Below, piece after piece: positions 2,255 to 61,470 of a stretch of 64,000 nucleotides of DNA; positions within the stretch are counted from its first letter, which is position 1, and each line of letters begins with the position of its first letter. Under the pieces are notes generated by a model that did no database searches, was not told where the DNA came from, and was given only the letters and a program-made list of their open reading frames with translations. The stretch comes from Haliotis rubra (Eukaryota): NCBI RefSeq assembly GCF_003918875.1, contig NW_025765958.1, forward strand, positions 248,001 to 312,000, given 5' to 3'. The position numbers and the translations under genes are program-made.

Positions 2255-2791
2255 CCGAAACTGGTGTCGATAACTAAAGAAAGTTGATAATTCAACACTA
2301 GACGGATTATACCTTCCCCGAGTACATTATGAAACCATATATGCACATTTAAACTGGTGTACACCGAAACTGGTGTCGATAACTGGAGAAAGTTGATAAT
2401 TCAACATTACACTGATTATACCTTCCCCGAGTACATTATGAAACCATATATGTACATTTAAACTGGTGTACACCGAAACTGGTGTCGATAACTGGAGAAA
2501 GTTGATAATTCAACACTAGACTGATTATGCCTTCCCCTGAGTACATTATGAAACCATATATGTACATTTTAACTGGGGTACACCGAAACTGATGTCGATA
2601 ACTGGAGAAAGTTGATTATTCAACACTAGACTGATTATACCTTCCCGTGAGTATATTATGAAACCATATATGCACATTTAAACTGGTGTACACCGAAACT
2701 GGTGTCGATAACTGGAGAAAGTTGATAATTCAACACTGGACAGATTATGCCTTCCCCTGAGTACATTATGAAACCATATATGTACATTTAA
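2255..2791. repeat. Tandem repeat, about 5 copies of a 109-110 bp unit
   Basis: The motif ccgaaactg recurs at 2255, 2364, 2473, 2583 and 2693; units differ by few substitutions. Confidence 0.95.
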
Positions 2792-4403: not shown

Positions 4404-4566
4404 GTGAGAGAGTTGGGTTTTGCACCGCTTTTAGCAATATTCCAGCAACATCATGCTGGGGAGAGCAGCAATGGGCTTCACACTTTGCACACGTGTGGGG
4501 AATCAAACCCGGGCCTTCAGTGTGACAAGTGTCAACAGTAAAACCACTAGGTTACCCTACTACTCC
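4404..4566 (-). mobile_element. Diverged tRNA-head SINE family A copy
   Basis: Reverse-complement similarity to 19269-19431 over its length. Confidence 0.85.
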
Positions 4567-11200: not shown

Positions 11201-12037
11201 ATTTATTGAAACGACTTACAAATGTACGTTCATCCATCCAAACAGAGAATGTGTCGTACAGACTATTGTACATGAGAACATGTAAAATTGCAAAATACAA
11301 TAGATGGATGGTGGAAGAGATCTATCCTTTGCGCAGAACTGCAGGTGGTGGAGAGACATTTTTCAAGAATACGTCCTGGGATATGTGACATACGACAGGA
11401 TAAGTGGGGATATACGACTGCAACTAGATGGACCCATGGGCGATGTTCATGCTGCAGAAGTCATATAGCATAACGAGGTAAACACCATTTATTGCCCTTA
11501 AAGTTGTATAATTAGCCACTTCAAAATTGAGTGAGTGAGTGAGATATTATTTAGCGTCACATCGGCAATATCCCAGCCATATCGTGACGAGAACAATTCA
11601 GCCTACATCAACATGAAAATAAAAAAAAGTTAGAACACAAAAACCTGTCACCGAAGGACAGTAAAAATACTAGAGTATCACAGCTATATAAGTTTATAAC
11701 CAGTACACTATCGCAAAATTAAATCAATATAGACAGTACAAAATACAAATGGGCTATAGATCACCAACAACTGAAGGTAGATCACCATACTAGGGGCCAC
11801 GGGGACTTACAGTACCTTTGCTACCTAGTTGACCCTACCTGGATTTACACCATCCCTTCAGCCATTGGTGATTGAAGACAAATCTAGCCATAAAGTAAAA
11901 GCACACATATTCTACGATTAAAAAGTGGCAAGTTTAAATTTACTCTAAATGTGTTGGGACTTACGTACCCTCTCAGGAGGACAATAAGTTTACAATACTT
12001 TAAACCCCTTTGAGGGTACAGCCACTAACAATCGAAG

Positions 12038-12271
12038 GACAAAATATCTACCACAATATTACTATTCACATCCTACCATGTTTAAATATTAATTTGATAA
12101 TGAACTCTAATAATACAACTTATATTCGTAAACTATGTATGTATATCCACGATGCTTTTGAACAAAGAAAATAACGTTTGCAAACATTGTGATTGTATGC
12201 CATTATTGTTTTTATATTTTGTACTATAGGCCTGTGGCCTCTTCAGTAATGGAATAAAGAGATTGTTTTTG
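12038..12271 (+). mobile_element. 3' fragment of an RTEX-like LINE nested in the Nimb 3' UTR
   Basis: 8-bp TSD aatcgaag (12030-12037 and 12272-12279). Encodes KYLPQYYYSHPTMFKY..IRKLCMYIHDAFEQRK*. The 3' motif ggcctgtggcct..aataaag is shared with 33689-33716. Confidence 0.85.
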
Positions 12272-12339
12272 AATCGAAGTTGATAATCTAAACTACCAAT
12301 TATGAAACCTTATCTATTTACAACACACTTATCAAAATT

Positions 12340-14850
12340 CATTTCACAAATCTATCTCTTTTAAAAAATCAACGATTAAATGATAATTAACATTATTAAA
12401 AAGGTCCTTTACTGTTTTGATATTGAAATATTTTTTATCCCTTATGATGGAGAATTCAACACAGTCAAGCAAGATATGCTTGACAAGGGATACAAAACGG
12501 AGGATCCTCGCCTTTCAATAGATATGCATGAGTATATCTTGTGTGGCCAATACGACATCGTCGCATGATGACCTCTTCAAATCTGGCCTGACAACCCAAG
12601 TAGGTGTAACCAGGAGGAGCCATAATCCAGCTTGGAACGTATAAGTGCTCGGTATAGTTGGAGGGATATTTTCTGATCCCCACCCCACTTTGTATTAGAC
12701 ACAACTTTCAGCAAATCAAGGGCCTTCAAGCATTTATTTTTTAAATATTTAATATGAGGTCGAAAGGTCAAGTGCTCATCAAAAATTAAACCTAAGAATT
12801 TAGCTTCTTTTACTACTTTAATAGGCGTGTTATCTAAATATAAATCTGGATCTTTGTGATACAATTAGTTTTTGACTTTTAAAATTTAAATCCATTTTCC
12901 AAACACCATTTATTAATCTTATTTAAACACAATTGTAATTGCCTTTCGATAGTATGCATACTTTTCCCACGACAAGAAATATTAAAATCATCAACAAAAA
13001 GTGATCCATCAATTGAATCATTTAAAACATTTGCCAAACTGTTTATTTTAATACTGAATAAAGTGACAGACAAAATACTGCCTTGTGGTAAGCGACCTCT
13101 CAATCCAAAACCATGTAAATCTTTTAAAATGCCATATTTCCACGTAGTGTCAAATGCTTTTTCGAGATGAAAAAGACAGACACTGCATGCTGTTTATTAA
13201 TTAAAGCATTTTTGACAAATGACTCCAAACGTACTAAGTGATCGATGGTGCTTCTGTTTTTGCGCAAACCACATTGAATATCTGTAAGTAGGTTATTTGT
13301 TTCCAAATACCAAACAAGACGATTATTAATCATGCGTTCCATGGTCTTGCAAGCGCAGCTTGTCAATGAAATAGGCCGATAATTAGAAGGATCAGTATGA
13401 TCACGTCCAGGTTTAGGTATGGGGACAATAATAGCATCACGCCATGAAGTAGGAAACTTTCCAGACGTCCAAATGTCACCAAAAATATTTAAAAGGGTCT
13501 CTAAACATGATTCAGGTAAGTGCTTCAGGAGTTGATAATGGATGTTATCAGCTTCTGTAGCAGTATCGTGAGCCTGGTCAAGAGCAGTAAGGAGTGCATC
13601 AATCGAAAATATTTCGTTGTAATCTTCCCGATTATCTGAATTGAAATAAATTGATTTCCGTTCTTGCTGTTTTTGATACTTTTGAAATTGAGGTACATCA
13701 TTAGATGAGGAAGACTGTTTAGCCAATGTCTCACCAAGTTTACTTGCAATATCTGATTTATCAGTCAATAATTGATTCCCATCTTTCAGATGGTGAATGC
13801 TAGATCTAGAGCCCTTACCTTTTATTTTCTGGATCATATTCCATACCTTAGAAATAGGCGTACGTGCATTGATGTAAGATACATAGTTTCGCCAAGATTG
13901 ACGTTTATTTTGTTTAAAAGTACGTCGCGCCTTAGCGTTTAATATTTTAAATTTGTTCAAGTATTGGACCATAGGATGGCGACGGAAATAACGCTAAGCC
14001 TTTTTCCGTGCCTTACGAGCCTGTTTGCAGTCACCATTAAACCATGGTTTGCGTACGTGAGGAACTACAGAGGACTTGGGATGCACTCGTCAGCTATGCT
14101 ATGCAGTTCATCAGAAAAACATTTTATAGCATCAGGAATATTAATGAAAAGTTCGGGTTTAAGCTTGTCAGTACAGAGAGTTTTCATATAAAGGCCAGTT
14201 GGCCTTTTCAAAATTACATCTTGACGATTGAGGAAAATCATATGGGTTCACGGGTTTTAGTATTGTAAGGAAATGGTCACTTCCACAGAGGTCGCCGTGG
14301 ACTGACCATTCAAATTCACTCAATAGGTTGGAGTCAGTAAATCAAGAGCTGAATACGTTCCTGTGCCAGGATGTAAATACGTATTTGAACAATTTATATA
14401 AATGCATAATTCATTATTCATAATGAAATCCTCCAGAATTTTGCCTTTAGCGTTTGTTGTTGCACCACCCCAGAGTGGATTGTGCCCGTTTAAATCACGC
14501 ATGATTATACACGGTTTAGGCAATTCATCATACAGAGCTTGAAGTTCCGCTAGATGAACAGTTGATGAAGGCGGAGTGTACAAAGTAACTGCAACATGTA
14601 AAGTGAGTCGCACTGCAACGGCCTGCAGATTTGTTTTAAGCATAATGGGGATGTGGATTACATTATTCTTAATAAGGATTGAAGATCCTCCACTAGCCCT
14701 ATCTCCTGGAGGAGAAACATAGTGATATGCATTATACTGACGCAAGTCAAAATGATCTCTCTGCTTCAGATATGTCTCTTGTAAGCAGAATGCTGACGGT
14801 TTAAAATCTTGGACTAAAAGATGTAAGTCATTCTGCAATTTCATTGTACT
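12340..14850 (-). pseudogene. Nimb LINE ORF2 (APE endonuclease-RT-zinc knuckle), frameshifted, RNase H region deleted
   Basis: Motifs CLQETYL, DLNGHNPLWG, YSALDL, PSNYRPISLTSC, PQGSILS, LFVDD, LIRSKLDYG, RIGHTRYTHAYLL..PPFCIPC. Confidence 0.92.
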
Positions 14851-14879
14851 AGAGGTGAAGAAGTTATCTCTTCGGGGGA

Positions 14880-16185
14880 TTAACAGGAGAACGACCCTCA
14901 TTTTTTTCGAGGGTGACAAGCTATGCGTCCGAAAATGGCTGCTTTCAGACACATCCATGTCCTCGACTGATCCTAACTTATTGAACAGTTGGACCTTGTT
15001 ATTGGCCCCTTTTGGCGATCTTCCACTGAGGTTCTCTTTTACAGGTTCAGTTCTAGATTTTGATTTAGTTTTTGTAATTTGTTTCACATTTTTGTGTCAG
15101 ATTTGGGTAATTGAGTTGATTGTGATAAAGATTGCGTCTGAGGTAAAGATGAATCCTTATCACAAGACGAGACTGAATGATTGTTTGACTTGAAGGAATG
15201 GTTTGTGAACAAGAGCTCTGTTGAGGAGGCCTCACTTGAACTTCCGCATATATCAAAGTAGGCGCAGATGTCTTTGTCCAAGTGTAATCAGTCTGGCAAG
15301 CAATTGTCTGAAGAGACACATTTTTTAGTCTTCGGCTCTGAAAGTCAAGCAGACGCCGTAGTGGCATAAGTAGATCCTGGCTGTTCTTGAGCAAGAACAA
15401 TCTTCTTTGCTTCTAGAAAACTTACATTACGGTCGTGCTTTATGCGAGAGATTTTCGACTGAACTTTCCATGTAGGACATTCCTTTGACGAGGACGGATG
15501 GCTACCTGAGCAGTTGACACAAGAAGGAGGATTGTTACATGACTTGCCATCCTCGCATGTTCCACCACATCGATGACAAGCAGCTGGATTATGGCATGAT
15601 TTAGATCCATGGCCAAACTTCTGACAACTGTAAAACCTCGGGGGATTCAGGATGAAAGCATCTACCCTTCGGTTACAGTAGCCAGCTTTAAGTGATTCAG
15701 GACGAGCTGTAAGTGTTTGTCTTGATGGTTTCATTGTCTCTCTTCATTGTAAAACGTTTTACGTCAATGACACTTTGAGATTTTAATTCTGCAACTATTT
15801 CAGCTTCGGCCATGTCCGAGAGACAACGTATTGCATCTCCTTCACTCCCCTTGATACTGTTTAACGTCCTGTGAGGAGAAACTTGCACAGGAACATTTGC
15901 TAAAGATTTAGTGGAAAGGAGAATCTGCGACTGAATGTGTTTCCTGCATTCAATCAAAAGACAGCCAGAACGTAACATTTTAACTTCTTTAACTTCTCCA
16001 GCTAAACCCCCAATACCCTTTGCAATGGCAAAAGGATTCAGCTTTAGAGGATTTCCATCAGTGGAAGACATGACTAAAAATCTACACCAGTGATCAGAGT
16101 TCATTTTGTGTGTTGAAGGATCGTCATCCTCCGAAGAGGGCGAATCTTCTGGTTCATGAGTACGATTTTTGTAAGGGGGTGCCAT
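14880..16185 (-). pseudogene. Nimb LINE ORF1 (gag-like nucleic-acid-binding protein), frameshifted
   Basis: LNPFAIAKGI..VKMLRSGCLLIEC..PHRTLNS; knuckles CQKFGHGSKSC, CHRCGG and CVNCSGSHPSSSKEC. Confidence 0.9.
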
Positions 16186-16645
16186 GTTAGTATTAGGTAT
16201 GTTAGATCCACTTGGGTCCCCACCCACCATGGATTGTCAAAAGGGACGATGCCTTATATCTGTGGACCTCAAACAGATGGCACCAAGGATACCAGGTGGA
16301 AATACTCAAGAAGAAACATATCTTGAAAAGACATATCTTACTAGATTGGCTTTCTGGGCATTAGGAATCTAGGCAAAACAGTTAATCCATTTTGAACATT
16401 TTGCAAATTGTAATACCGAAAGTAATTGATGCCAAAACAGTTCCTTGAAACCTAAAGTAAGTAAAGATATACTCAGTACAATTTCAAATACACAGGGCAT
16501 GGCATGACCAGCCCATTGGTTGAAGGTGAAGTTAGGGCCGAAGTGGTGGAACCAGTTCCTGGAACCAGTGCCCTCAACCACCAGAATTCCTTCCTCCACC
16601 GACACAGGGGCGAACCCACGGCAAACGGGTTGGTGGACCAAATAT

Positions 16646-16780
16646 NNNNNNNNNNNNNNNNNNNNNNNNNNNNNNNNNNNNNNNNNNNNNNNNNNNNNNN
16701 NNNNNNNNNNNNNNNNNNNNNNNNNNNNNNNNNNNNNNNNNNNNNNNNNNNNNNNNNNNNNNNNNNNNNNNNNNNNNNNN
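16646..16780. other. Assembly gap (N run) inside the LINE 5' UTR
   Basis: Run of N. Confidence 1.
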
Positions 16781-16819
16781 ACAGCACCCGCCACGAGGAT
16801 GTGGCTCTTCACGGGTGCC
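16781..16819 (-). ncRNA. 5' half of a candidate HDV-like self-cleaving ribozyme
   Basis: RNA GGCACCC-GUGAAGAGCC-ACA-UCCUCGU-GGC-GGGUGCU-GU: 7-bp P1 with G1.U wobble and canonical L3 UCCUCGU. P3 is imperfect in the canonical register, and P4/J4/2 would fall in the gap. Confidence 0.55.
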
Positions 16820-22500: not shown

Positions 22501-23842
22501 AGTGTATGCGCGCTGACCAAGTTTTCAGGATTTTTTGCATTTAATCCTTTAGTTAGCTAATTACTTCTTGTCGATATTAACTTCTACTTATCTATGGAGA
22601 CATAATATTCGACAATTAACAGGTTTGATCACAATGTATACAATGACAAGGGTAGGACATTGTATACTCGTAATGTTGTTCTCTGAGGTCACTTGTTAAT
22701 GACAAAAACAACAACATGTGTACATAAACGATTGGGAGTACCGAGAAAGTGTAATCCCAAATATACCACGTGTTTCCTAAATGGTGTTTCGTACAGCAGT
22801 GTCCTTGGAGGGCAGAAAGTACGTCGAAGAAACGTACATACAGAAATACGAGTAGGATATTGAATACTGTACAATTAGATTACACTGAATACATATGTAG
22901 GCTGTGAAGTACTATGCGGGCGTAAATTTAAACAAAAACACCTTCAAAACAGCGTCACTAGGTTTAATTGAAGAACTTTATTTTGTCAGACCTGATTGAT
23001 GTCCTGTTAAGAACATGTTATTGCAAGAGTAGCAGACCTGAGGGTTACATACCTGGTCAAGTTTTAGTGTCACCCATCCATTAATCCTTTAAAACAACAT
23101 GTATCTACCTCGGCCGAACATGGATTTTACAGAAATAATGTCAGGTACGACACCGACTGGAGGCGTGGAGTGTCGTAACTGGATGTCAAGAGCGCCGGGA
23201 TGACAAAAATACTCTGACATTTCGGAATAATGTTTTTCTTAAAGTATCACTTCACAATGTGAATTACTGTGGTAGTATTGCTTTCCTTAGCCGAGCAGCT
23301 TGTTTTCAGTGACATGTGTCATAGTCATGTGTTATTGTGAATCGGGCGAGGGTACACTCACCGTTTTGGACACTCTGTAACGTTATTTCATGTATGAACA
23401 CGTCAATGTTGATGATGGCATATCATTGTAAGTCAATCCAACGAAAATCGGATATTAGCATGCGAATTGCATTGCTCCATGCAGCTTGGTGCTATATTTC
23501 TTAAATGGTGTATCAAATTCATATATTTTTGGAGAGATGAATCGATATGAAACTACGGTTGCGTCCTCTTTAGTGAACCATTTAGGGCGTTCTCCTCTGC
23601 GTTGCAAAACGAATATGTTTCTAGACGTTTTTTCGGTATATGTTCGATCATTAACATCTCTGAAAAAGTGCGACTAAGTGATAAATTCTACAATTGTCAC
23701 AGCTAATTCGCATTCTAAGCAAAACAGAATCTGTCTGAAGACACCATAGTCTTTTCCCTTTACGTTGTATGTTGCAGCGTACAGTCTTTACAGGCAAACT
23801 TTGAAAAACTGATTGATACAAGAATGGCACTTTTCGTGAGGA

Positions 23843-23990
23843 TTGTCACATTTTCTGCGGACAGAATGGCAAATGTCACATGTTCTGTAGATAGAATGGG
23901 GACAGTCCCATGTTCTGTGGATAGAATGGCGACAGGCACATGTTCTGTAGGCAGAATGGCGATAGACACATGTTCTGTAGACAAAACGGC
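23843..23990. repeat. 30-bp minisatellite, about 5 copies
   Basis: Unit cacatgttctgt(a/g)gatagaatggcgacag repeats with period 30. Confidence 0.9.
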
Positions 23991-30214: not shown

Positions 30215-33200
30215 TTTCATTTTTTTTTTTAGAATTCTTAATATTGATTTCATAGAAGTTTGTACTTCGTTTGACATTGTCGGGTTCACAGAATTATGGA
30301 GTAACTGTGCAAACGACACAATAGAACAACAGTTCACTGATTACACAGTATATCGACATGTAAGAGATTATAATAGTAGAGGGTGAGTTTTATTACTGAT
30401 AAGAAGCATTTGGCAAAAAGGAATTAAATATATGTTAATACTTTTTTTAGTGATAGCATTTACGTTCTTCTTGACTCGAAGGTATTTGGCTTCCCAAGAG
30501 ATGTTTTACTTGGTATCGTGTATGTACATCCTTATGCATCCTCAGGCAAGTCTGATACTCGTAATGTCAAAGGGATTGGTTTCATTGAGTCGTGCCTTGT
30601 ACAGTTGTTGTCACTATTCGGTGATGTTGATGTAATACTTGCAGGTGATTTGAATGCCAGAACAGGTTTACTGGACGATTTTATTTTACATGACGATGAC
30701 AAAAGTGATTCTTACATTAGTGTTTTGAATGACATGAATTACCAAAGAGATTCCTTTAGATCTCCAAGGAGGTCAAGAGACAAAGACGTTAACACTTATG
30801 GTCTAGACTTGATCAATCGTTGCTGTTTACTAGGAATACATATGTTAAATGGTCGTTTCTCTGGCGATGCTGACGGTAGGTTTACTTGTCATACACAGAA
30901 CGGTCGATGTCTGGTTGATTACATTTTGTGTTCCAGTCAAATCTTTGAAATAATTGATAACTTTAAAGCGGTTACCCGCACAGAGTCAGATCACTTTCCC
31001 TTATTATGTTACTTCAATAGATCAGAAAATCGTGTTAGTGAAGATGAAGGGGTTGTTTACCAAATTAACAGATATAAGTGGAAGCCGTCAAACTCTGATA
31101 TATTTCTTGAATCCCTTAGTGCACGTATATCTCTGTTGGAAATGAACCATTGTTCTGCTATATCAAATAAGCACACGGGTGAAGCTGCTAATAAACTTAT
31201 AAACATTGTCCAAGAAAGCGGAAAAGACGCACACATGTTATTAAGAAAACGTGTCACTAAAGACATAAGTGAGGTTAGGTACGACCATGAGTGTAAAGAC
31301 TTAAAGAAAAGAAAGTATTCAGCATTAGATAAATTCCGAATCACAGGGAACTTCAACTATCTTACCGAATTTAGAATTTATAAAAACAAATACAGAGAAG
31401 TTTGCCGTTTGAAGTGTGATTGCTATCACGAGTTTACAACCATGCAATTATTACAATCATGTCAGGATGGTAACTATAAATCATTCTGGTCTGGTGTTAA
31501 GTCATTATTAGGTAAACCGGTTACACAGGCGACATCTATCAGCAGTTTGCAATGGGTCGCTTACTTTATAAATATTCTGAAAATTAAAGATGTTAACATA
31601 GACGAAGATATTATAACCTTTGCCAAACAGTATATGTTGCAAAATGATTTTACATTGATTGATGATGACTCTAATAATATTCTAAATAAAGAGATAACCA
31701 TAAATGAAATAACAAATGCATTATCAGCTTTAAAACTTGGCAAAGCATGTGGTCCTGATGGACTACCTCCTGAAATGTGGAAATACGGAGGTCATCTTTT
31801 ACTACCTTATTTGCATGTACTTTTTAATTGTATTTTTAACTCACGAGACTTTCCTTCTGCTTGGTCACAAAGTATTATCTTCCCACTTCACAAGAAGTGG
31901 AACAGAAATGATGTTAATAACTATAGAGGTATTTCCTTGATGGACATAAGCGGAAAAATATTCACTTATATTTTAAATGAAAGACTGAAAGCATTTGTTG
32001 ATGTATATAATTTAAATCCCGAATGTGAAGCTGGATTCCGCTCAGGCTATTCAACTGTTGATAATGTTTTTACCTTACAGGCTTTAATTAAAAAATACTT
32101 GTCCAAGTCTAAGGGTCGATTTTATTATTTATTTGTTGATTTTCATAAAGCATTTGATTGTGTAAATGGAGATCTATTATGGTATGTTCTTTCTCAAAAC
32201 AATATTCACGGTAAAATGCTTTCAATAGTGCGCGATATGTACAATAAATTAATTTCAGCAGTAAAACTATCAAATTCTAGCATTTCAGAATATTTCAATT
32301 TCCTTGAGTGGTGTATGACAAGGATGTATACTCAGTCCATTTTTATTTAGTATGTTTGTAAAACAACATGGATCTTACATCGTCTGCCGAAAGAGGTATT
32401 TTTGTTGGAGCAGAATTTTTAGAGCTCTTTTTATTATTATATGCTGATGATTTATGTATATTTTCTGACACAGTTATAAGTTTACAAAGAAAGATTAATA
32501 TTTTATCCAAATGTTGCACAAAATGGGGCTTAAAGGTTAATTTTACGAAAACAGAGATAATTGTTTTTCACAACGGAGGTATAGTGAAGAAGACCGAAAA
32601 GTGGATGTTTAACCATGGGAAGTTGAAAACTACATGCTATTACAGCTATCTGGGTATTTTATTTTCCAGCAGACTATCTTGGTCAAAAGCAGTCCAGACT
32701 CTCGTACAGAAAGCTCATAAAGCCCTTTTTCCAATTAAACAGCCTCATCATAAAATGAAAAATCTTTCTCCTACTGTCTTATTTCAAATGTTTGATACAC
32801 AAATTGAGCCTATCTTATTATATTGCTCAGAAATATGGGGTTTTCAAGAGTGGCTAATTCTAGAAAGATTTCATGTAAAATACTGTAAATATGTTCTTGG
32901 TGTTGGTATTACCACAACAAATGCAGCTGTTTTATCTGAATGCGGTCGTCATAATATATGTTGTGATTCTATAATAAGATGTGTTAAGTACAGGTGTAAA
33001 TTATTAATTATGGAAGAGACTAGATATCCATAACAAACCTATATTAGGTTAAAAAGAATGGACGATATTAACCGCAAGTCATGGGTAACTGAAGTGAGGA
33101 AATTAATTTATATTTATGGTTTCAGCTATGCGTGGGAGTTTCAAAATATTGTTAACACTGACTTATTTTTAAACAGTTTTCTCAACGAGTTAAAGATTGT

Positions 33201-33734
33201 AACATCCAGCGTATATTTTCAAGTTAAATGAACATTCTAATTTAGAGTTCTATTCAAGTGTCAAAAGTACGTTTAATAAGGAATCATACTTGTCAACATT
33301 ATATAACAAAGATTTAAGAAGATATTTATCACTTTTAAGATTCGGTGAATTAAATATTATGAAGAATACAGGCAGAAGAAATAATATCCCAAGAGAATTA
33401 AGATTTTGTCCATTTTGTAAGAACATTTTAGAAGATGAGGTTCATTTTATGTTTATTTGCCAACAATATGATGATTTAAGAACAGGATACATGTTAAATA
33501 TTCACTGTAAAGATAGAAACACTCTCATTCGCCTTCTTCAAAATGAAAATAGCAATTATTTATATATGTATGGAAATTATATTAAGGAAGCGTTTAAGCG
33601 ACGTAGCGCATTATATTGTGAATATATAAAAATATGTTCTAGTTATTGTGCACATCATACCTTTTGTATTGTAATATATATTGTACATGGGCCTGTGGCC
33701 TTTCTACTGAATAAAGTTATATATATATATATAT
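30215..33734 (+). mobile_element. RTEX-like LINE, most of ORF2, frameshifted
   Basis: APE motifs AGDLNART, VDY, SDH. RT motifs GPDG, NYRGISL, FVDFHKAFD, LLYADD. C-terminal CPFC..EDEVHF..C. Ends in aataaa plus (TA)n; 12-bp TSD catatttcattt (30203-30214 and 33735-33746). Confidence 0.92.
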
Positions 33735-35734
33735 CATATTTCATTTCAGAAGGTCTGAAAGTTTCTGCTATCCCACATTTATCTTTCCACATTCCTGTGC
33801 AGTTGGCTAATCCAAGCTACAGTTTCGGATGCATACAAGTTCATCTAAATTTGGTAAAAATAAGTAACCCCGATTGCGACAGCCCGTCTGTCAAGGCGTA
33901 ATCCTTTATCAACCTCACAGAAGAGTTTATTATCAGGAAAGTTACCCTTAAAGTAGACCATCAGAAAACCGAAAGTTCGTGACTACGTGAAGCGATACAT
34001 TTGTAAGCTAACACTTAAATCTTTGCTGGAAATTCAACGTACAAATGCGCTAAGCACTACTCACAGTGTAGGTTGTCGGAATGATGCAAAGTACATCCGA
34101 GATAATTCTTCCGTTTCGTTTGTTTAGCCATCTACCAAGAGTCCCCCGAATCCAGCAGGACCTCCAATTCACTTACATTCGTTTCACAATCTATCTGATC
34201 CTTAGCCAAATAATTCTATCACTATTAGTACACACTTAACTTAAATGGCCAAATCACAGAGCCGAATTATTTTGTGCTTTCCCACACCTTTGAAGTTTTT
34301 ATTGTTTCACGCACGTCTGACAAAGACAGCCTTTCTGTTGTTGCAAAGATCCAGTTCTAATGCTTAGTTTGTGAAAAGATACACTTTCATGTAAAAGAGG
34401 TACGTCATTAAAACTGAAATGAAACTCCAATGGGATTGAGGATGCCTGAACTTAAGGACTTGCGTAATGACTAGCTTGTGAATTACAGAGGGCATGGTGA
34501 AAACAATAGGGTTCAGTACGATGATTCAGTGTGACCAATCTGATCTGGTTGGATGTTGCATTGCCACCGACACGTGTTTTGTGGATATGTCAAGTTTTAA
34601 CAGCGTAGTCAGCAATCGTGTTTGTATCGGGGAAACAAATGACCGAACGCAGGAACCACGAAACCATAATGTAGTATGACATGCAATGAGCTGAGTTACA
34701 CGTCCTTAAACCTGATCTTAGAGATTCCACTTTAAAACTCCAACATATTTGAATGACATCAATATCACATTTGTTATAAAAAATCAGGATAACAGTTACA
34801 ATATTTCGTTTGAAAACCGTATCATACGGTCATACTGGTTTCAATCCCAGTGCTGGTGATATATGTTGTAAGGGCGTTTCAGAGGCTGTCACAGTCAGTT
34901 GTTGTTGAATTCGATTGTCATTATTAATTTGTAGATATTCTCCACGGCTGATGTACATCCACAGAGTAGATCTCGGACTAGTTGTTGATTCATAAAAGAG
35001 AATATGGATGTTGAAAGGGTTTAGTCGCTTTTATATAGATGGTGTGACGTACAGTTAACTTTGCAAAACGTTTGCTGATGATCAATAACAAACGTATATG
35101 GTGGCCGTGCAAACTATATATCAGAAAGTACACATATACTCATGGAAACGAATTAGGGAACACATGAAACTACAAGAGTTGCTTTGTTTATTTCTAGAAT
35201 TTCACCACCAGTGCAATACATACCTTGTGAAAAAACCTGGGGCCTACCTTTAGAATACAGCACCACAAACTTTAAAAATACGTCATAATACCCTTTTACG
35301 TAATGTAATGTGATTTTGTTCGAAAGCACGTTCTCGAAACAATGCCCTATGACACCTGCATGGCAACACGGTTGTCTGGCTAAGCGAGTGCGTATAAGCT
35401 TCGCTCACTGGTGTTTCATCTCTACGAGCTATGTCATTGCATAAGCCCAACGATGTTGAGAGTTTCCAGTAGTTGTATACCGGCGGATGCGCAATATTTC
35501 GCAAGCGCCAGTTTGAAATATTTTTCTTTTTCACTTATACGCTCATATTTATTTGTATTACGGGGTGCTGAGGTGTTATATTTTGTGTATTTTGTATTTT
35601 GTATTTTTTAAATTTACATATATATTTTTGTCATTCAGTAATTTGCACCATTACATAAAAAAGTGTTTTATTAGTATTTTATTTTTCGAAGCGGTTATAA
35701 TGCATTACACTAGACACGTCAGTCATGTTTGTGC

Positions 35735-41365: not shown

Positions 41366-41568
41366 TCCTGCAGAAGATTTGGGTTAAAATTGGTCTTCAG
41401 CAACCCATGCTTATCGTAAGATACGACAAACGGGATCGGATGGTAAGACTCGCTGACTTGGTTGACACATGTCATCGTATCCCATTTGCGTAGATTGATG
41501 GTCCAGAGGCGATTATTTACAGACCTATATACATATTGATGAGTGCGGCGTTAAACAACCAACCAACA
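41366..41568 (+). mobile_element. SINE family B copy, internally deleted
   Basis: gaagatttgggttaaaattggtcttcagcaacccatgctt..cgggatcgg..gctgacttggttgacacatgtcatcg..gagtgcggcgttaaac. Confidence 0.88.
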
Positions 41569-42379: not shown

Positions 42380-44260
42380 CGTAACACGTTTAGGCTTGAA
42401 GTAGGCATCCCCATGGACACTAATTATGCCAACCTGTTTTTCATAGACATGAATTTCTGCAAAATCAAAACAAAACATTTTTGTCAAGAAGTTGAACTTA
42501 AGCTTCAGGTACACCAATGATCTGATGGCGTTCAATAACAATCAAACGGCCAATTGCATTACACTGATTTACCCACCTGAACTTGAAATATATACTAGGC
42601 ACATAAAGAAACTGTGCATACAAAAATTTAAAATCTAAATTTATCAAACCTGTGTAGACACATAAGGATTTAAACTCAGAGATTAGTATCCAACATGCAT
42701 GCACGTGCCACGTTCCGAGACGTCAGTGGGTTCGTCCTTGAGACGTGCAATACGTTGTTGCACGTGCATTCCGGGAAAGAGAAACAGAGCAAATGAATGC
42801 CACACAATACTGTCACTTTGGAAAGCTCAACCCCTGCCTTTGCGATCGTTCAAAAAATTATACGGCTATTGAAACGCATAGCATGCCAAGACTCACGTCT
42901 GCACAACGTCATGAGGCCATTGGGATGGTCCGTGGGGGAATGTCTCAACGACAAGTGGCTGCACATTTCCACTGCCACCGGAACACCATTTCTGCACTGG
43001 TGAGACGCTACCAGAACACAAATGACGTCATCGATCGGCCACGTTCTGGACTTCCACGTGTAACAACGCCAAGACAGGACAGATGGATAAGGGGGGCCCA
43101 TCTTCGCCACAGGTTTCAGACTGCAGTGATGACTGCCCGAACCATCCCAGGACTTCGCCGTATCCACCCCAACACAGTTCGACAACGTTTACGTCATCAC
43201 GGGATCAGACCACGACGTCCCATCCTATCCTGACACAACGTCATCGACAAGCTCGCCGAATGTGGTGCCGAAATCATGTCCGCAGACCCTTGTTTTGGTG
43301 GAGTAATGTTGTTTTCACAGATGAGTCCAGGTTTAACATTTCCCATAGTGATGGACGTCAACGTGCCTATAGACGCGTGGGAGAACGTTATGCTCAGGCC
43401 TGTGTCTTGGAGAGGAATCGCTTTGGTGGTGGTTCCGTGATGATTTGTGGTGGAATAACAGCACGCCAAAGAACTCCTTTGGTGATTGTTCAGGGCAACT
43501 TAACTGGTGTGGGCTACAGGGATCAGATTCTTCGACCTGTGGCAATTCCTTTTCTGCAACGTCATGGCCCTGGGTTAACATTCCAACAGGACAATGCCCG
43601 CCCTCATACGGCAAGGGTTGCAAATTCACCGGATCTCTCCCCGATAGAGCATGTTTGGGACGAGATGGATCGACGTCTACGCTGTCTTCCTCATCCGCCA
43701 GATAACGTCCTTGACCTTGCAACAGAACTTGAGAGAATCTGGCGTGACATCCCACAAGCCTTCCTTGCACGTTTGATAGGCTCTATGCGTCGTCGATGCA
43801 CTGCTGTTCTCAATGCCGATGGTGGACATACCCGTTTTTGAGCTTGTGACATGGTCGTTTGACCCCTGTCCCGCTTGTGGACTCGTGACGTCATTGTGAT
43901 TGACTTTTCAATTGAAATTCTCCCGACTTGTTATGGTGTCATGATCCCTCCATTAAAGTTTATATGTACCTTTGACATTGTTCTCGTACTTATCAACTGG
44001 GATAATATTTTGACAATGCACGGTTTCTTTATGTGCCTAGTATATGTCAAAGGTGAGACCGCCTCTTGTCTTTCATATTTAGATTTATGCATAGATATTC
44101 AGAGTGACAAATGTCTCTCTACAAAGCTGTATGATTTGAACTTTCCAGCAGCCAACTTTCCTTTCCTGTCGAGCAATAGTCCAACAGCTCCAGCCTTATG
44201 ATGTTTATGTTTCAAAACATTCGAGGTTCAAAGATTTCAAGGAGGTTCTCTTGCATCACA
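42380..44260 (+). mobile_element. Penelope-like retroelement RT relic split by a Tc1 insertion
   Basis: GIPMDTN..FRYTNDL..IYPPELEI before 42592, continuing as SYLDL..LSTKLYD..NFPFLSSNSPTAPAYDVYVS after 44045. Confidence 0.85.
42593..44042 (+). mobile_element. Tc1 element with both TIRs; transposase (42883-43841) frameshifted
   Basis: TIR tactaggcacataaagaaac(t/c)gtgca with TA TSD. Paired-like HTH, FTDESRF, QQDNARPH, SPDLSPIE, GGHTRF*. Confidence 0.96.
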
Positions 44261-44915
44261 AGTTTGGATAAATCTGTCATGCCCAAATCATTTAACAATG
44301 AAATTATTTTCTCACGAACGTTTCATACGTGTTATGTGGACCGAGAAATTAACGGTCACGTCAAATTCACATCGCAACATCGAATCGCATTATATGTTCA
44401 CTCTATTAAACACAATTCTGAGCCACGAACACGAAAACGGTGTAACTGTTATTGATATCATTGCTTTGTGTAGCCATAGTTGAAGATGGACATTAACAGA
44501 GTGAATTATAGCTGAAGCTAAGTTAAAAGTGACATGGTCATCATGTAAATTTACTATTTCATGGTCATAGATTTGGAGAAATAGCTAATAACGTATAGTA
44601 TCCATGGCTAACACTATTACCCTTAGTGATAAATCTGTTTATTCATTTTGTCTGTACGTCTCTTCGTGAGAAGAGGTAATAAAAATGATATCACTGCATA
44701 ACAGATATTGACTTGTAATCGGTCTTATCATACTCACGCAGAGGAAAGTAAATGCAAATTGTTTAATTACAATAACATCAGCTCCCCGTAGGCCATAAAT
44801 CTAAATATTAACTCTTTGTTCGGTCTACACATTCTGATCACTGCCAATATACTTGCCATTGGTTCATTGACAATTACAACATCAAACGTCTTATCGGTTG
44901 TAGATTGTGCTTTGG

Positions 44916-45188
44916 ACCCTTGAAGATCCGGAATAGAATAGGTCTTCAGCAACCCATGTGCTTGCAATAAAAGGCGACTATGCTTGTCGTAAGAGGCGAC
45001 TTACGGGATCGGGTGGTCAGTTTCGCTGACTTGGTTGACACATGTCATCGGTTCCCAATTGCGCAGATCGATGCTCATGCTGTTGATCACTGGATTGTCT
45101 GGTCCAGACTCGATTATTTACAGACCGCCGCCATATAGCTGGGATATTGCTGAGTGCGGCGTAAAACTAAACTCACTCACTCACTCAC
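44916..45188 (+). mobile_element. Complete SINE family B copy (no tRNA head)
   Basis: Bounded by TSD tagattgtgctt(t)gg; (ACTC)n tail; internal duplication of the gcttg..ggcgac segment. Confidence 0.92.
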
Positions 45189-46060
45189 TAGATTGTGCTT
45201 GGAAATGAACATGTCCCATAAACATAATCATCAAACAAATTACTTAGACATCTCACACGGACATTCACGGCAACTAGGTTAATTTCATAATAATGTTTCC
45301 ATGACAACATACGATTGTATGACATACATGCATATAATTGACAAAATATCAATTTAAGTTATGTATAACATTTACGCTGAAGTAGTATAGAACGAAGCTT
45401 TAGGCTCCTTATGCAAAAAGGATACAAAAGCATTTTGCCAATATATCATGTCATTACAAAGGCTGACAATCATTTTATCACACTGCTATGTGTTTCCTTT
45501 GCACTTACGCTCTATCTAAGCATAAAATCAAACAGTACCTGTTTTGACTGATCCTTCTCATGAACATTAATTCTTCTGATGAATATGTCATTACTGTATA
45601 CACGAATCTTTTGTTCATTTCTTTCTCTTTCACACTTTCATCTTGAAACGAATAGAAAGAACCTTATCAATGCCTTGTAGCTGGGACGAAGACTTCTATT
45701 TGACATCATCATGCTTTAGATGCCTGGTGCTTACTCTATTAAGAATGTTAAACAAAGCGGGAATGACGTATCGTATAATGCAAGGTGTCCATTGTCTATA
45801 ATGATGTGTTGTTAAAGCTAATATAGCCCGCAGCACTTGGGGACATACGAAATATAGGCCGCGTTATATCTGTCGAACAGGTGACGTGCCTTTGCATGTA
45901 TCATCGGTCTGTGATAGTGATTCGTAAAAAAACATGCTCATAATTGAGTCGAACTCCTATTATCGACTCTGCTGTTAACAGCGATGTCTCGAACATGCTA
46001 ATATTGAAAGCTTTTTATCACTTCTATTAACAGCACGGTCTTGAAACGATGGCCATTTAG

Positions 46061-46231
46061 ACTGACTGACTAACTGAGTTTGGCTTTACGCCGCTTTTAG
46101 CAATATTCCAGCAACATCACGGCGGGGGACACCAGAAATGGGCTTCACACGTTGTACCCATGTGGGGATTCGAACCCGGGTCTTCGGCGTGACGAGCCAA
46201 CGCTATAACCACTAGACTACCCCACCGCCCC
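46061..46231 (-). mobile_element. SINE family A copy with TSD
   Basis: TSD ggccatttaga; intact A and B boxes. Confidence 0.95.
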
Positions 46232-49200
46232 GGCCATTTAGATGGCCATTAATGGAGTTTTAATCCAAGTGGATTTTGATGTATATCAAGAACGTAGATT
46301 TCTTCAGCATATGCATCCGTTATTTATGTTTTAACTCGATGTATGGAATTAAGAAGTTCTTCTACACATGCAACACTGCCTTTTGTAGTTCCATGAATAG
46401 CGTTGCTATTAGTTTGAGCTTTGTCAGTTGCTATAAAAATCGATTCGATAATTCAGCCATGCTATTGACTTCATATTATCATTTTAAAAGTCGAGCGCTC
46501 TTGCAGTACTGTATCGATCATAATGACATACATATTAGTGATGACACAAGAACATTACGAATGAGGGATTGATATCTCTGAAAACTACTTGGCGTTCAGC
46601 CTGAATATTCACACATTGTATTAATCAGAAATCGATATCACAAGACAACTTGGACTGCATGCACCTACTCTCAATTCAAGAATAATGTCAAACGTTTCCA
46701 CTCTCACATTTAATGCTCTACGGTCCTGAGAGAACCCTCACACGGAAACCAATCACGTCAACGCATTGCGGAGCAGGTAATGAAATTCACGTTACAGGAC
46801 GTGTGTGGAACAGAAACACTCTTTTAACTTGCTTGGTATCGTTGAATTATTAAAATGCAGAAAAGCCTATCAAACGAATAATACAGTATAGCAACTGCAT
46901 CTTGAAATGGAGATCATAGTTTAATTACCATCCCTGGGTGACCAGAGTTAAGGCAAGTCCACAGATGATCGTATTCATCAACATCTTGATCAGAGACAGA
47001 TGTAATCAAATCAAAGTTGGAAAATGCAATTCTTTAGAGATGCAATATGACGTGTTTAGAAATATTTTGGCAAAGGTCAGTTGACCCAAGGAGGTAAAGG
47101 AGTCATCATGTTTTACACAAAAGGTATCATTTCGCTCGTAAACACGATACAAAGAAACGAAAACGACCTATTAATCTTTAGCATGCAAGGTTACTTCATC
47201 CCTTATACAGAATTTCAAAAGCGTCGAATGATGACAGCGTCGAATGTCTGGATACATATTTTCTGTCTCACTAATATGGTGGTGGCCGTTAATAGTTCAA
47301 TGGAGGGACAGAGCAAACAAACACTGTCCGACAAAACCTGTATTTAGACGAGAGATGTATTGTACTGCTAAAAGAGTATCATCAGTGGGTGACCTAAATC
47401 AACCAACAACACGGTATCTCATGCTGGTACAAGTTGAACTCGAGAGATAATGGGCTATACGTATACGTATTTACATGCATATTTTGGGCAATCTCTAGAA
47501 TGCCCAATAAAGGACATACTTTGGACAGAATGTAAATGTAAACTGTTCAGATTGGTGATTGGACGAGACAATAAATTCGGGAATTAACATCTTCACTCCT
47601 GGCCTTCCCCCAATTTATCAATCATAATGGGAGAACGTGGTTTGATTAAAGTGGATGCTTTGCACGCATTTAATTGTTTGACGGTTCTCCTCTGAAGCAT
47701 TTCAAGACTTGTATTGAAAACAAGGCATTTCACAATTTCCTTTAAACGAGCCAAGGGTATCTGGCATAATCTCAATGTCAATGCTGATCTTGTTGATTGT
47801 CCTCTACTGCTGACAATCAGTTTTAATCGGCACAAACTCAAGACAGTTTTAAGAGTTTATGTGCAGTTATATTGAGGAAGAACCTGGAAAGTGAAACAGA
47901 ACCGACCACAATCAGTCACTTCCGCTCAAAACCCTCAGCATGCATTAAAACGTTTATATGTAAAGTAGAGTAATATGTATGAATTTAATGAAATTGTCAA
48001 TTACACAATCGTTGCCGCAAACACAGTGTCTTAAAAGAATGAAGGCTGATTATGAGGAACCACATGCTAGTAGAACCGAATGTTAATCACGTTGTACGAT
48101 TTCATGTGTTTATGATTGTGATGTTACCATGTGTTCCTGTGAAGGTGAGCGTACTCTGCTCCTACCTTGTATTACATAAAGCACGTATATCAAGTAGTTT
48201 ATGCAATTCACGGCACGTATATTCGATGTTGTATTCTCCTTCCTTGTCAACACACTCTCACAAACACTGTTCATAAAATCGTGAACATCATGCCAACTGT
48301 AGATTATGTAGCATTTGCACAGCTGGCGCATCGGACACAAACCGAACTAATTCAGCGACATAAACAACGTATGACAGAAAATCGATATGCAGAGATTATT
48401 ATTTCAATTTCAATATACATTATAAATATCTAGAATCCATTGTTTGTAAAAGATAAAACTAAATCATTTGAGCGAGAAACATTGAACAGTTGTTCGCACT
48501 AAATAGTTAGTGTTATGGTATCACCGAGACAGGTAGAGCCAATAGCATTATCAACATGAAATCAGTTGCTTTATAAATCATGAGTGTCTTTTTATTGATT
48601 CCGTGTTCAAAGTATTGGTACAGGGGGTAACGTAATAGTATAAAGCGTCACAAAACCCGGTTTCATAATTCCGGTTTGGTTCCGATTGGGATTCTCGGTT
48701 GTTTTTAAAAATGGCAACATCAAAGACGTGCATAGTTTTAATGAGACACAGTGTTGTCATGCTGTGATATTTTTGTTCACTCATTTATGTGCTCATAATT
48801 TTCATGATATTTGATTCATCTATATCATATGACCAGTGAGCTATGTCTACGTTTCTCTTCTCGGGCAGTAACTGTCCCTGTGATCAGTCACAACACACGG
48901 ACGAGCTGTAAACCAGCTTCGGATTAGTTTTTGAGTCAACTTCAAGGCCGAAATGTGTAGCATTCTGCACATATATATTCTATTCTTTGGAGGTAATCGT
49001 AATAAATTCTACAACCTTCTACAATTAAAACTATTCAATTTAAAATCCCTCATACAATTATCATCCCTGATATATTGCATTACTTGTGTCAACCATGTGT
49101 CGACAATAGACAAGCCGAATGTTTTTGTTTTAAAATCACGTGACAAATGCCCCTAAAGGGAGAGATTCATTGTCATAAGAGGACAAACGTTACATACAAA

Positions 49201-61302: not shown

Positions 61303-61470
61303 TTCCAGGGTTAAAATTGTCTTCAGCAAAGTATCATGCGTAACAGGCGACTATCGGGATCGAGTGATCAGGCTTGCAGACTTAATGCATGTCATTGTAT
61401 CCCAGCTTCGTAGATCGATGTTAAAGATATAAATCAGTGTTTTGTCGGGTCCAGACACGATTGTTATATA
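61303..61470 (+). mobile_element. Diverged SINE family B fragment
   Basis: gggttaaaattgtcttcagca..ggcgactatcgggatcg..agatcgatg..ggtccagac. Confidence 0.7.

What the first reader, a model, noticed from the sequence alone, without database searches (positions are those of the whole stretch)
44916..45010. SINE family B has a pseudoknotted, ribozyme-like head instead of a tRNA
The TSD-defined start is acccttgaaga, 9/10 identical to cccgtgaaga at the LINE 5' end, and there are no A/B boxes. Combining copies (41366, 44916, 61303) gives a stem GAAGAUY/GGUCUUC whose loop GGGUU can pair with downstream AACCC, then a hairpin GUCGU-AAGA-GGCGAC, then CUWA and CGGG able to close on the 5' CCC. The hairpin has a compatible variant UCGU..ACGA in the 41366 copy. 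The order resembles HDV P2/P3/P1.1/P4/J4/2 without P1. It may be a self-processing or internal-promoter RNA on a bipartite LINE-derived element. The GGGUU loop is mutated in the 44916 copy.
Basis: partly seen in the sequence, partly recalled or inferred. Interest (0 to 1): 0.7.

Follow-up and report, generated by a model that had tools for sequence, protein, structure and literature searches.

The report
Abalone SINE with LINE-like, non-tRNA head
This is a very abundant abalone SINE whose head is not a tRNA but starts like its partner LINE, a kind published in 2016, and I found no support for the head being a self-cutting ribozyme.

Summary
The element at 44916-45192 (+) is a real, full-length, recently active SINE. 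It has target-site duplications and an (ACTC)n tail. At least 40 copies are 97-99% identical and at least 30,000 heads exist genome-wide. All full-length copies, young and old, begin at (G)ACCCGTGAAGA.

There is no tRNA head: no A or B box, no ARAGORN call and no Rfam match.
- Nt 1-14 match the partner LINE's 5' region 13/14.
- Nt 7-25 match the T-arm region of a co-resident tRNA-derived SINE 16/18.
- The last ~60 nt carry the LINE-type 3' stem-loop.

This fits the "LP-SINE" class described in Haliotis by Matetovici et al. 2016 (PMC4758252).

The ribozyme reading is not supported:
- Only the first hairpin (GAAGAUC/GGUCUUC) shows a subfamily-level compensatory change (A-U to G-C).
- The proposed GGGUU:AACCC pseudoknot is broken without compensation in the younger subfamilies, and the strand order is not HDV-like.
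- No P3/L3 or catalytic C is present.
- Fold energies are unremarkable.

SINE 5' ends are heterogeneous. A non-target G is present in about 37% of insertions overall and 76% of young ones, whereas the LINE's 5' bases are 94-99% uniform. That argues for a promoter or cap-type start rather than a precise cut.

Earlier scan notes (s1-339667, s1-327957) report an HDV-like ribozyme at this LINE type's 5' end on other DNA of this genome.

The parts
44901..44914 (+). 5' copy of the target-site duplication (TAGATTGTGCTTTG)
   Evidence: It matches 45189-45202 with one mismatch.
44915..44915 (+). G between the TSD and ACCC. In this copy it could instead belong to the TSD. Family-wide it is a non-target extra G.
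   Evidence: 22 of 29 young copies with a TSD have one extra G that is absent from the 3' TSD copy; 49.6% G genome-wide against a 19% background.
44916..45192 (+). Full-length SINE-B copy of the youngest subfamily
   Evidence: 40 copies at 97-99% identity, all starting at position 1-2; junctions.
44916..44929 (+). 5'-terminal 14 nt shared with the partner LINE (consensus ACCCGTGAAGATCC; this copy has a private G5>T)
   Evidence: 13/14 identity to LINE nt 4-17, shuffle p about 5e-4..
44921..44948 (+). Hairpin 1: stem UGAAGAUC/GGUCUUCA with a 12-nt loop. It is the only helix with evolutionary support.
   Evidence: sample of 100 heads: pair 11/28 is A-U 58, G-C 24, G.U 11, A.C 5. Pair 12/27 switches between U.G and U-A; 4 double-sided changes in local copies.
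44922..44940 (+). Stretch resembling the variable-loop and T-arm (B-box) region of the tRNA-derived SINE family A
   Evidence: consensus nt 7-25 versus family A, 16/18 identity, shuffle p about 5e-4. The B-box C is A in all subfamilies.
44951..44955 (+).
   Evidence: it is invariant, while its proposed partner base 18 is U, G or A among subfamilies.
44959..44980 (+). 22-nt tandem duplicate of the hairpin-3 unit. It is specific to the younger subfamilies and has decayed in the original register.
   Evidence: alignment (intermediate copies L046 and L047 against old and young copies).
44986..45000 (+). Hairpin 3: GUCGU-AAGAG-GCGAC
   Evidence: It is present in the consensus, with no double-sided changes.
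45003..45009 (+). ACGGGAU, complementary to the 5' (G)ACCCGU. It closes a four-way junction in the MFE fold.
   Evidence: There is no covariation, and A1 faces A69.
45126..45161 (+). LINE-type 3' stem-loop (CGCCGC...GCGGCG around the conserved loop GCTGGRATATTGC)
   Evidence: it aligns with the LINE 3' end and with family A. Two compensatory pairs separate the SINE and LINE stems.
45166..45171 (+). ACTAAA hexamer just before the tail repeats
   Evidence: PMC4758252 names the same hexamer for the Haliotis/Ostrea LP-SINEs.
45171..45189 (+). (ACTC)n tail
45189..45202 (+). 3' copy of the TSD
41373..41556 (+). Older SINE-B copy without the 22-nt duplication
61303..61465 (+). Old, degraded SINE-B copy
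11528..16819 (-). Partner-type LINE (EN and RT remnants). Its 5' end reads GGCACCCGTGAAGAG... and its 3' end has the same stem-loop and (ACTC)n tail. 16675-16780 is masked and was not filled.
   Evidence: Its 5' bases are conserved genome-wide.

Best explanation
The interval is the head of a full-length, recently active copy of a very abundant abalone SINE family. The family has no tRNA, 5S or 7SL head and belongs to the LINE-headed ('LP') kind of SINE.

The head is a composite:
- Nt 1-14 are those of the partner LINE's 5' region.
- Nt 7-25 look like the T-arm of a resident tRNA-derived SINE. The octamer GAAGANCC, common to all three sequences, is the likely recombination or template-switch point (inferred).
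- The body is family-specific.
- The last ~60 nt are the LINE-type 3' stem-loop plus (ACTC)n, which the LINE reverse transcriptase uses for target-primed reverse transcription. That mechanism is inferred from the shared tail and the 8-19-bp TSDs.

The only head structure kept by selection in the source genes is the 8-bp hairpin 1.

Transcripts start at A1 or at a G just before it. I infer that this end is set by an internal, LINE-like (probably Pol II, capped) start signal, not by self-cleavage. The head is not a recognisable ribozyme.
For: Identity and boundaries:
- Sharp common 5' end in two subfamilies and in sampled old copies.
- TSDs in 29 of 30 young copies.
- 30,151 heads match a loose head pattern.

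No Pol III head.

LINE relation:
- 13/14 identity at the 5' end.
- Shared 3' stem-loop with compensatory stem changes and the same tail.

T-arm similarity: 16/18.

Hairpin 1: a compensatory subfamily change through a G.U intermediate.

Start mechanism:
- A non-target G precedes ACCC in 22/29 young insertions.
- About 37% of all insertions carry it, in equal shares of the GAAGA and GAAGG subfamilies, so it arises per insertion event.
- The same RT's LINE copies keep their first three bases in 94-99% of about 800 heads.
- Extra 5' G is a known mark of reverse-transcribed capped RNA (own knowledge: L1 insertions, CAGE tags).

Published class: LP-SINEs include Haliotis families, have an ACTAAA hexamer before the repeats, and carry an untested promoter hypothesis (PMC4758252).
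Against: - No RNA end data could be obtained. All available runs are contigs.
- The extra G could be a vestige of the LINE's own G1/G2 rather than a cap mark.
- Only 14 nt of LINE similarity could be shown. The rest of the LINE 5' region in this window is masked and was not looked up.
- Identity with the published Hdi_LP consensus could not be checked, because the sequence is not held.
- The 3' strand of hairpin 1 is not explained by the T-arm origin.
- If the LINE 5' end is an HDV-like ribozyme (earlier notes, unchecked here), then the shared 14 nt are ribozyme strands, not a promoter.
Confidence: 0.6

Rival explanations
1. The head is a self-cleaving (HDV-like or new) ribozyme that trims read-through transcripts to the exact 5' end.
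For: - There is no promoter box, yet the 5' end is sharp.
- The first 14 nt equal the P1/P2 5' strands of the LINE's candidate HDV-like ribozyme (notes s1-339667 and s1-327957).
- With the 5' G, GACCCG can pair with CGGGUU, with a terminal G.U. UGAAGAUC pairs with GGUCUUCA. Together these give a P1/P2 pseudoknot topology, read directly from the sequence.
- Hairpin 1 (= P2) covaries.
Against: - No Rfam ribozyme hit at E<=10.
- No P3/L3, no P1.1, and no C in the 6-nt linker AGAAUU.
- Base 18 of the P1/pseudoknot partner varies among U, G and A in active subfamilies without compensation.
- A 22-nt duplication lies in the core.
- z-scores are weak.
- 5' ends are heterogeneous, unlike the LINE's.
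- A more extended HDV-like model shows no covariation.
Confidence: 0.08
2. The SINE is a Pol III transcript driven by a cryptic internal promoter, a remnant of a tRNA-derived head truncated in the anticodon or variable region.
For: - 16/18 similarity to the T-arm/B-box region of family A.
- No TTTT run inside the element.
- SINEs are normally Pol III transcribed.
Against: - No A box. The B-like site has 3 mismatches, including the invariant C, in every subfamily, and it lies at +17.
- The youngest subfamily diverges further from a B box.
- The extra 5' G and the ACTAAA hexamer fit Pol II better.
Confidence: 0.15
3. The head carries no start or processing signal. A few master copies are driven by flanking promoters, and the head is merely inherited.
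For: - The youngest subfamily is 97-99% uniform, compatible with one master.
- Fold and motif scans find nothing distinctive.
Against: - At least four successive or parallel subfamilies, totalling 30,000 or more heads, all keep the same first base.
- A compensatory change in hairpin 1 shows selection on the head.
Confidence: 0.12
4. Nt 0-70 form a tRNA-sized cloverleaf mimic: a 7-position closing stem GACCCGU/ACGGGAU plus three arms. A host enzyme such as RNase P cuts at its 5' end.
For: - The MFE fold of nt 0-72 is a four-way junction, with the best z of the set (-2.1).
- The closing strands are also kept in a divergent copy that lacks hairpin 1 (L051).
Against: - ARAGORN and the Rfam tRNA models find nothing.
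- Arm sizes are unlike a tRNA's.
- There is an A.A mismatch in the closing stem, and it shows no covariation.
- The 22-nt duplication changes the junction.
Confidence: 0.04

Closest known systems
LP-SINEs ('LINE promoter' SINEs) of gastropods and bivalves, including Haliotis diversicolor/midae Hdi_LP/Hmi_LP (Matetovici et al. 2016, PMC4758252)
   Same: - TSD-flanked short retroposon with no small-RNA head.
- The 5' end resembles the 5' end of a LINE.
- Tandem-repeat tail preceded by a poly(A)-signal-like hexamer; ACTAAA is named in the paper and is present here.
- Same genus-level host: the probe match to Haliotis gigantea, and three coded organisms that hold the family.
   Different: - Only 14 nt of LINE similarity could be shown here, against about 70 bp reported.
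- Nt 7-25 look T-arm-like.
- The published consensus could not be compared.
- The partner LINE, 'as yet unidentified' in the paper, is here a candidate sharing both ends with the SINE.
HDV-like self-cleaving ribozymes at the 5' ends of non-LTR retrotransposons (R2, RTE, L1Tc) and of the non-autonomous NARTc (Sanchez-Luque et al. 2011, PMC3185411; PMC3383444)
   Same: - A non-autonomous element shares its first nucleotides with its LINE.
- The shared bases correspond to the P1 and P2 5' strands of the LINE's candidate ribozyme.
- A P1/P2-type pseudoknot can be drawn.
   Different: - The SINE lacks P3/L3, P1.1, P4 and a catalytic C.
- No covariance-model hit.
- The 5' ends are not uniform.
- NARTc keeps the whole 77-nt Pr77/ribozyme; this SINE keeps 14 nt.
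tRNA-derived SINEs with LINE-type tails (family A in this window, 46060-46232 minus strand)
   Same: - Same 3' stem-loop and repeat tail, so the same LINE machinery.
- 16/18 similarity to the T-arm region.
   Different: No acceptor, D or anticodon parts, no A box, and a defective B box.
SINEU / Tx1 LINEs sharing snRNA-derived 5' ends (Kojima 2015, cited in PMC4758252), and RIME/ingi of trypanosomes
   Same: SINE and LINE share both extremities.
   Different: In SINEU the shared 5' part is a U1 or U2 gene with its own promoter logic. RIME is a plain internal deletion of ingi, whereas the body of SINE-B is not LINE-derived.

Membership tests
tRNA-derived SINE | A box (TRGCNNAGTGG) near +8 to +19 | tested here: not met
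   nothing within 2 mismatches in the head. The family A control has 0-1 mismatch.
tRNA-derived SINE | B box (GGTTCGANNCC) about 30-60 nt downstream of the A box | tested here: not met
   the best site, GGTTAGAATTG at +17, has 3 mismatches including the invariant C. It is the same in all subfamilies.
tRNA-derived SINE | Detectable tRNA-like gene or cloverleaf | tested here: not met
   ARAGORN found 0 genes. No Rfam tRNA hit at E<=10.
HDV-like ribozyme | Match to the curated HDV-like covariance models | tested here: not met
   no ribozyme family at the gathering score or at E<=10, on a young and on an old copy.
HDV-like ribozyme | Strand order P1-P2-P3-L3-P3'-P1'-P4-J4/2-P2' (nested double pseudoknot) | tested here: not met
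   Sequence: the two GAAGAUC/GGUCUUC strands are only 12 nt apart. Only a P1/P2 skeleton can be drawn, and P3/L3 and P4 have no room.
HDV-like ribozyme | L3/P1.1 and a catalytic cytosine in J4/2 | tested here: not met
   The linker AGAAUU (AGAAUA in young copies) has no C, and the hairpin-3 loop AAGAG has no pyrimidine.
HDV-like ribozyme | Helices kept by compensatory change | tested here: inconclusive
   Only hairpin 1 covaries, as one event. The pseudoknot, closing and far-P2 helices do not. Copies are mostly neutral relics.
HDV-like ribozyme | Self-cleavage 5' of the first nucleotide | not testable with these tools
   Needs in vitro transcription. The heterogeneous 5' G argues against a single precise cut.
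LP-SINE (Matetovici 2016) | Short non-coding retroposon with variable TSDs and a 3' tandem-repeat tail | tested here: met
   TSDs of 8-19 bp and an (ACTC)n tail.
LP-SINE (Matetovici 2016) | Head homologous to the first ~70 bp of a Nimb/I/RTE LINE 5' UTR, not to a small RNA | tested here: inconclusive
   13/14 nt identity with the LINE in the window. Beyond LINE nt 39 the window is masked and was not looked up. The Repbase references are not held.
LP-SINE (Matetovici 2016) | Tail module shared with a LINE, and a poly(A)-signal-like hexamer before the repeats | tested here: met
   (shared stem-loop). ACTAAA at 45166-45171, as named in PMC4758252.
LP-SINE (Matetovici 2016) | Sequence identity with the published Haliotis consensus Hdi_LP/Hmi_LP | not testable with these tools
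   No supplementary text is held and figures are not held.

The most novel reading that the evidence does not exclude
The head is a stripped-down derivative of the partner LINE's HDV-like ribozyme that keeps only the P1 and P2 strands. It would work as a processing signal. Read-through SINE transcripts would be cut at their first base either by a still unrecognised minimal self-cleaving fold or in trans by LINE-encoded ribozyme cores, with the SINE supplying only the substrate strand.
Probability: 0.06. Interest if true: 0.8.

Novelty: new member of a known kind. Interest (0 to 1): 0.3.

Why it matters
SINEs are defined by Pol III heads. LP-SINEs are the published exception, and what their head does has been open since 2016. 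This family is a very large, still active example of at least 30,000 heads.

This report adds:
- A candidate partner LINE that shares both ends with the SINE.
- One compensatory change that marks a selected 5' hairpin.
- A genomic contrast that bears on mechanism: variable non-target G on the SINE against uniform 5' bases on the LINE. It points to a promoter or cap-type start rather than self-cleavage.

The report also removes a tempting but unsupported ribozyme claim. If the LINE head is indeed an HDV-like ribozyme, the SINE shows that the first 14 nt alone are worth keeping, and that can be tested at the bench.

Tried and rejected
- **Rfam.** Gathering threshold on the whole window, then E<=10 on a young and on an old copy: only noise.
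- **ARAGORN.** Nothing.
Only hairpin 1 has double-sided changes. The U18-A37 pair is broken in 11 of 25 copies.
- **My own P1/P2 skeleton** (5' GACCCG with the loop CGGGUU). No support beyond hairpin 1.
- **An extended HDV-like model**: P1 = 0-6/64-70, P2 = 35-39/94-98, P3 = hairpin 3, P4 = 76-92. No covariation. It also lacks the L3/P1.1 signature, so I rejected it.
- **Thermodynamics.** z between -0.1 and -2.1 for seven nested segments of the old and the young heads.
- **RNA evidence.** All listed runs are contigs and none is on record as RNA. No starts or ends can be read.
- **More genomic copies.** Subfamily statistics therefore rest on the 100 listed matches of each pattern search and on 364 kb held locally.
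- **Metagenome scan for relatives.** One contig of unknown origin, L051.
- **LINE clade.** Only EN and RT remnants were found, and no RNase H, in this decayed copy. I could not confirm 'Nimb'.
- **Masked stretch 16675-16780.** I did not fill it or look it up from other copies. I searched only the unmasked LINE letters.
- **Literature on LP-SINE function.** No follow-up found.

Full report
**What is at the coordinates**

Window 44916-45192 (+) is a 277-bp retroposon. A 14-bp target-site duplication flanks it (44901-44914 and 45189-45202, one mismatch), and it ends in (ACTC)n.

The window comes from a 1.38-Gb eukaryotic genome. A search of that genome returned 40 scored copies at 97-99% identity, out of 2,724 candidates. 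Every one starts at query position 1 or 2. Their junctions show unrelated flanks and TSDs of 8-19 bp.

An older subfamily lacks a 22-nt internal duplication. It gave another 40 copies at 94-97%, again all starting at position 1-3. About 45 further copies were taken from 300 kb of loci and the window. Every copy that reaches the head begins ACCCGTGAAGA; the rest are ordinary 5' truncations.

A loose pattern of the head matches 30,151 places. So the start is real and family-wide, and no longer version with a tRNA in front exists in what I sampled.

**No Pol III head**

- ARAGORN finds no tRNA in the window.
- Rfam finds nothing at the gathering score in 64 kb, and nothing but noise at E<=10 on a young and an old copy.
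- Box scans find no A box. The only B-like site is GGTTAGAATTG at +17, with three mismatches including the invariant C.
- The tRNA-derived SINE 'family A' at 46060-46232 (-) serves as a control and has perfect A and B boxes.

**Relation to the LINE**

A decayed LINE lies on the minus strand from 16819 to 11528, with endonuclease and RT remnants.

Its 3' end carries the same module as the SINE tail: a conserved loop GCTGGRATATTGC inside a 6-bp stem, then the (ACTC)n repeat. The stems differ by two compensatory pairs, CGCCGC/GCGGCG in the SINEs and CGTCAC/GTGACG in the LINE. This is the usual signature of a LINE RT recognition hairpin.

At the 5' end, SINE nt 1-14 match the LINE 13/14 (shuffle p about 5e-4). 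Pattern counts on the unmasked letters show the LINE-type head is GGCACCCGTGAAGAG. The three extra bases are conserved in 94-99% of about 800 copies, so the LINE starts 3 nt further upstream.

In that register GGCACCC pairs with GGGUGCU, with a terminal G.U. CCAC/GUGG encloses a C- and U-rich loop. This is what earlier notes of this scan call a minimal HDV-like ribozyme (s1-329489 on this window; s1-339667 and s1-327957 on other DNA of this genome). I did not verify that claim. LINE positions beyond nt 39 are masked in my window (16675-16780), and following the operators' rule I neither filled them nor read them from other copies.

**A second similarity**

SINE nt 7-25 (GAAGATCCGGGTTAGAAT) match the variable-loop and T-arm region of family A 16/18 (p about 5e-4).

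The octamer GAAGANCC is common to the LINE, family A and SINE-B. The simplest origin is therefore a recombinant or template-switch product: a LINE 5' piece joined to the 3' part of a tRNA-like head. This is inference.

The alternative is that the head is the LINE ribozyme with P3/L3 and P4 deleted. That also fits nt 1-19 (17 matches with one 13-nt gap). It cannot be decided without the masked letters or Repbase references.

**Structure tests**

The consensus head is (G)ACCCGUGAAGAUCCGGGUUAGAAUUGGUCUUCAGCAACCCAUGCUUGUCGUAAGAGGCGACUAACGGGAU.

RNAfold gives a four-way junction: a closing stem CCCGU/ACGGG, hairpin 1, a weak middle arm and hairpin 3. The z-scores run from -0.1 to -2.1 against dinucleotide shuffles, which is not distinctive.

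SINE copies are mostly neutral relics, so I looked for changes fixed in subfamilies.

- **Hairpin 1.** In a sample of 100 heads with intact anchors, pair 11/28 is A-U in 58, G-C in 24, G.U in 11 and A.C in 5 (Fisher 5e-10, although linkage by descent inflates this). Pair 12/27 alternates between U.G and U-A. The G-C type is a large subfamily of its own. This is one clean compensatory event through a G.U intermediate, and it supports hairpin 1.
- **The other helices.** Nothing comparable exists for them.
- **The proposed pseudoknot.** Loop base 18 is U in old subfamilies, G in an abundant younger one (about 19 of 100 sampled heads) and A in the youngest. AACCC never changes.
- **The duplication.** The younger subfamilies also carry a 22-nt tandem duplicate of the hairpin-3 unit in the middle of the supposed core.
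- **HDV-like requirements.** The two strands of hairpin 1 are 12 nt apart, which leaves no room for P3/L3, P1' and P4 between them. The linker has no cytosine.

The HDV-like reading therefore fails on topology, on core residues and on conservation.

**How the 5' end is made**

Of 29 young insertions with a clear TSD, 22 have exactly one G between the TSD and ACCC that is absent from the 3' TSD copy. Six have none.

Genome-wide, the base before ACCCGTGAAGRTCCGGG is G in 13,085 of 26,406 heads (49.6%) against 19% G in the window. That implies about 37% of insertions carry a non-target G. The GAAGA and GAAGG subfamilies are about equally represented among heads with and without the G, so it arises per insertion event and is not inherited as a lineage marker.

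By contrast, LINE-type heads, copied by the same kind of RT, keep G1, G2 and C3 in 94-99% of cases.

A precise self-cut should give the uniformity seen in the LINE. The SINE's variable G looks instead like alternative starts, or like the extra G left when a capped RNA is reverse-transcribed (own knowledge: L1 insertions, CAGE). Together with the ACTAAA hexamer before the tail (45166-45171), this favours the published, untested LP-SINE idea of a LINE-type Pol II start (PMC4758252). The G could also be a vestige of the LINE's G1, so I hold this at moderate confidence.

RNA data could not help. All runs offered are contigs, and none is on record as RNA. They do show the family in three coded organisms.

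**Known or new**

Matetovici et al. 2016 described LP-SINEs in Littorina, Haliotis diversicolor/midae, Ostrea, Saccostrea and scallops. The heads are homologous to the first ~68 bp of Nimb/I/RTE LINEs. The hexamers AATATA and ACTAAA precede the Haliotis/Ostrea tails, and the partner LINE is unidentified. The authors explicitly mention the promoter-plus-ribozyme example of L1Tc Pr77.

I found no later work on their function. The present family fits this class. Whether it is the very Hdi_LP family could not be checked, because no sequence is held. I therefore file it as a new member of a known kind and score it low to moderate.

**Limits**

- The covariation evidence is a single event.
- The LINE clade (Nimb) was not confirmed.
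The only thing deliberately left out was reading the masked LINE stretch from other copies.

Noticed in passing
window 16781-16819 (-): The LINE-type head reads GGCACCCGTGAAGAGCCAC(A/C)TCCTCGTGG(C/T)GGGTGCT. About 800 copies exist genome-wide, and the first three bases are conserved in 94-99% of them. GGCACCC/GGGUGCU gives a 7-bp P1 with a terminal G.U, and CCAC/GUGG gives a P3 around a C- and U-rich loop. The C/T variant keeps pairing as G.U. This is consistent with the candidate HDV-like ribozyme noted by others. The rest is masked here.
   Followed up: partly
window 45126-45161 (+), 46072-46110 (-), 11548-11590 (-): SINE-B, SINE-A and the LINE share a 3' stem-loop: an invariant loop GCTGGRATATTGC and stems that differ by two compensatory pairs. 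It is probably the RT recognition hairpin.
   Followed up: partly
window 46060-46232 (-): Family A is a 170-bp tRNA-derived SINE with perfect A and B boxes, the TSD ctaaatggcc and the same LINE-type tail. Further copies lie at 4455, 20787 and 52374.
   Followed up: partly
PMC13170236 (Haliotis gigantea ITGA8 study), versus SINE-B nt 52-100: The 49-nt pull-down probe around the colour-associated non-coding SNP rs26532113 is 45/49 identical to the SINE-B consensus. The SNP is the CpG in GGGATCGGGTGG. The reported regulatory variant therefore appears to lie inside a copy of this SINE.
   Followed up: partly
L051:1622-1721 (contig PEAW01029925.1, origin unknown): A SINE-B-like copy starts GACCCGT and has the normal body from ATGCTTATCG onward. 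Hairpin 1 is replaced by a shorter, unrelated 24-nt stretch that could form its own UGUUU/AAACA hairpin.
   Followed up: no
window 44959-45002 (+): A tandem 22-nt duplication of the hairpin-3 unit marks the younger subfamilies. The upstream unit has lost the original pairing but can pair in a register shifted by one.
   Followed up: partly
window 42745-43841 (+): Two overlapping ORFs carry HTH_23/HTH_28 and DDE_3 domains. This is a Tc1/mariner-type transposase remnant, lying between two SINE-B copies.
   Followed up: no
window 2255-2801 and 23837-23986: Tandem arrays with periods of about 110 bp (5-6 units) and 30 bp (5 units). Their nature is unknown.
   Followed up: no
window 30518-33901 (+): A second LINE remnant (EN and RT domains over three ORFs). 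There is no ACCCGTGAAGA-type head nearby, so it is 5'-truncated or of another family.
   Followed up: no
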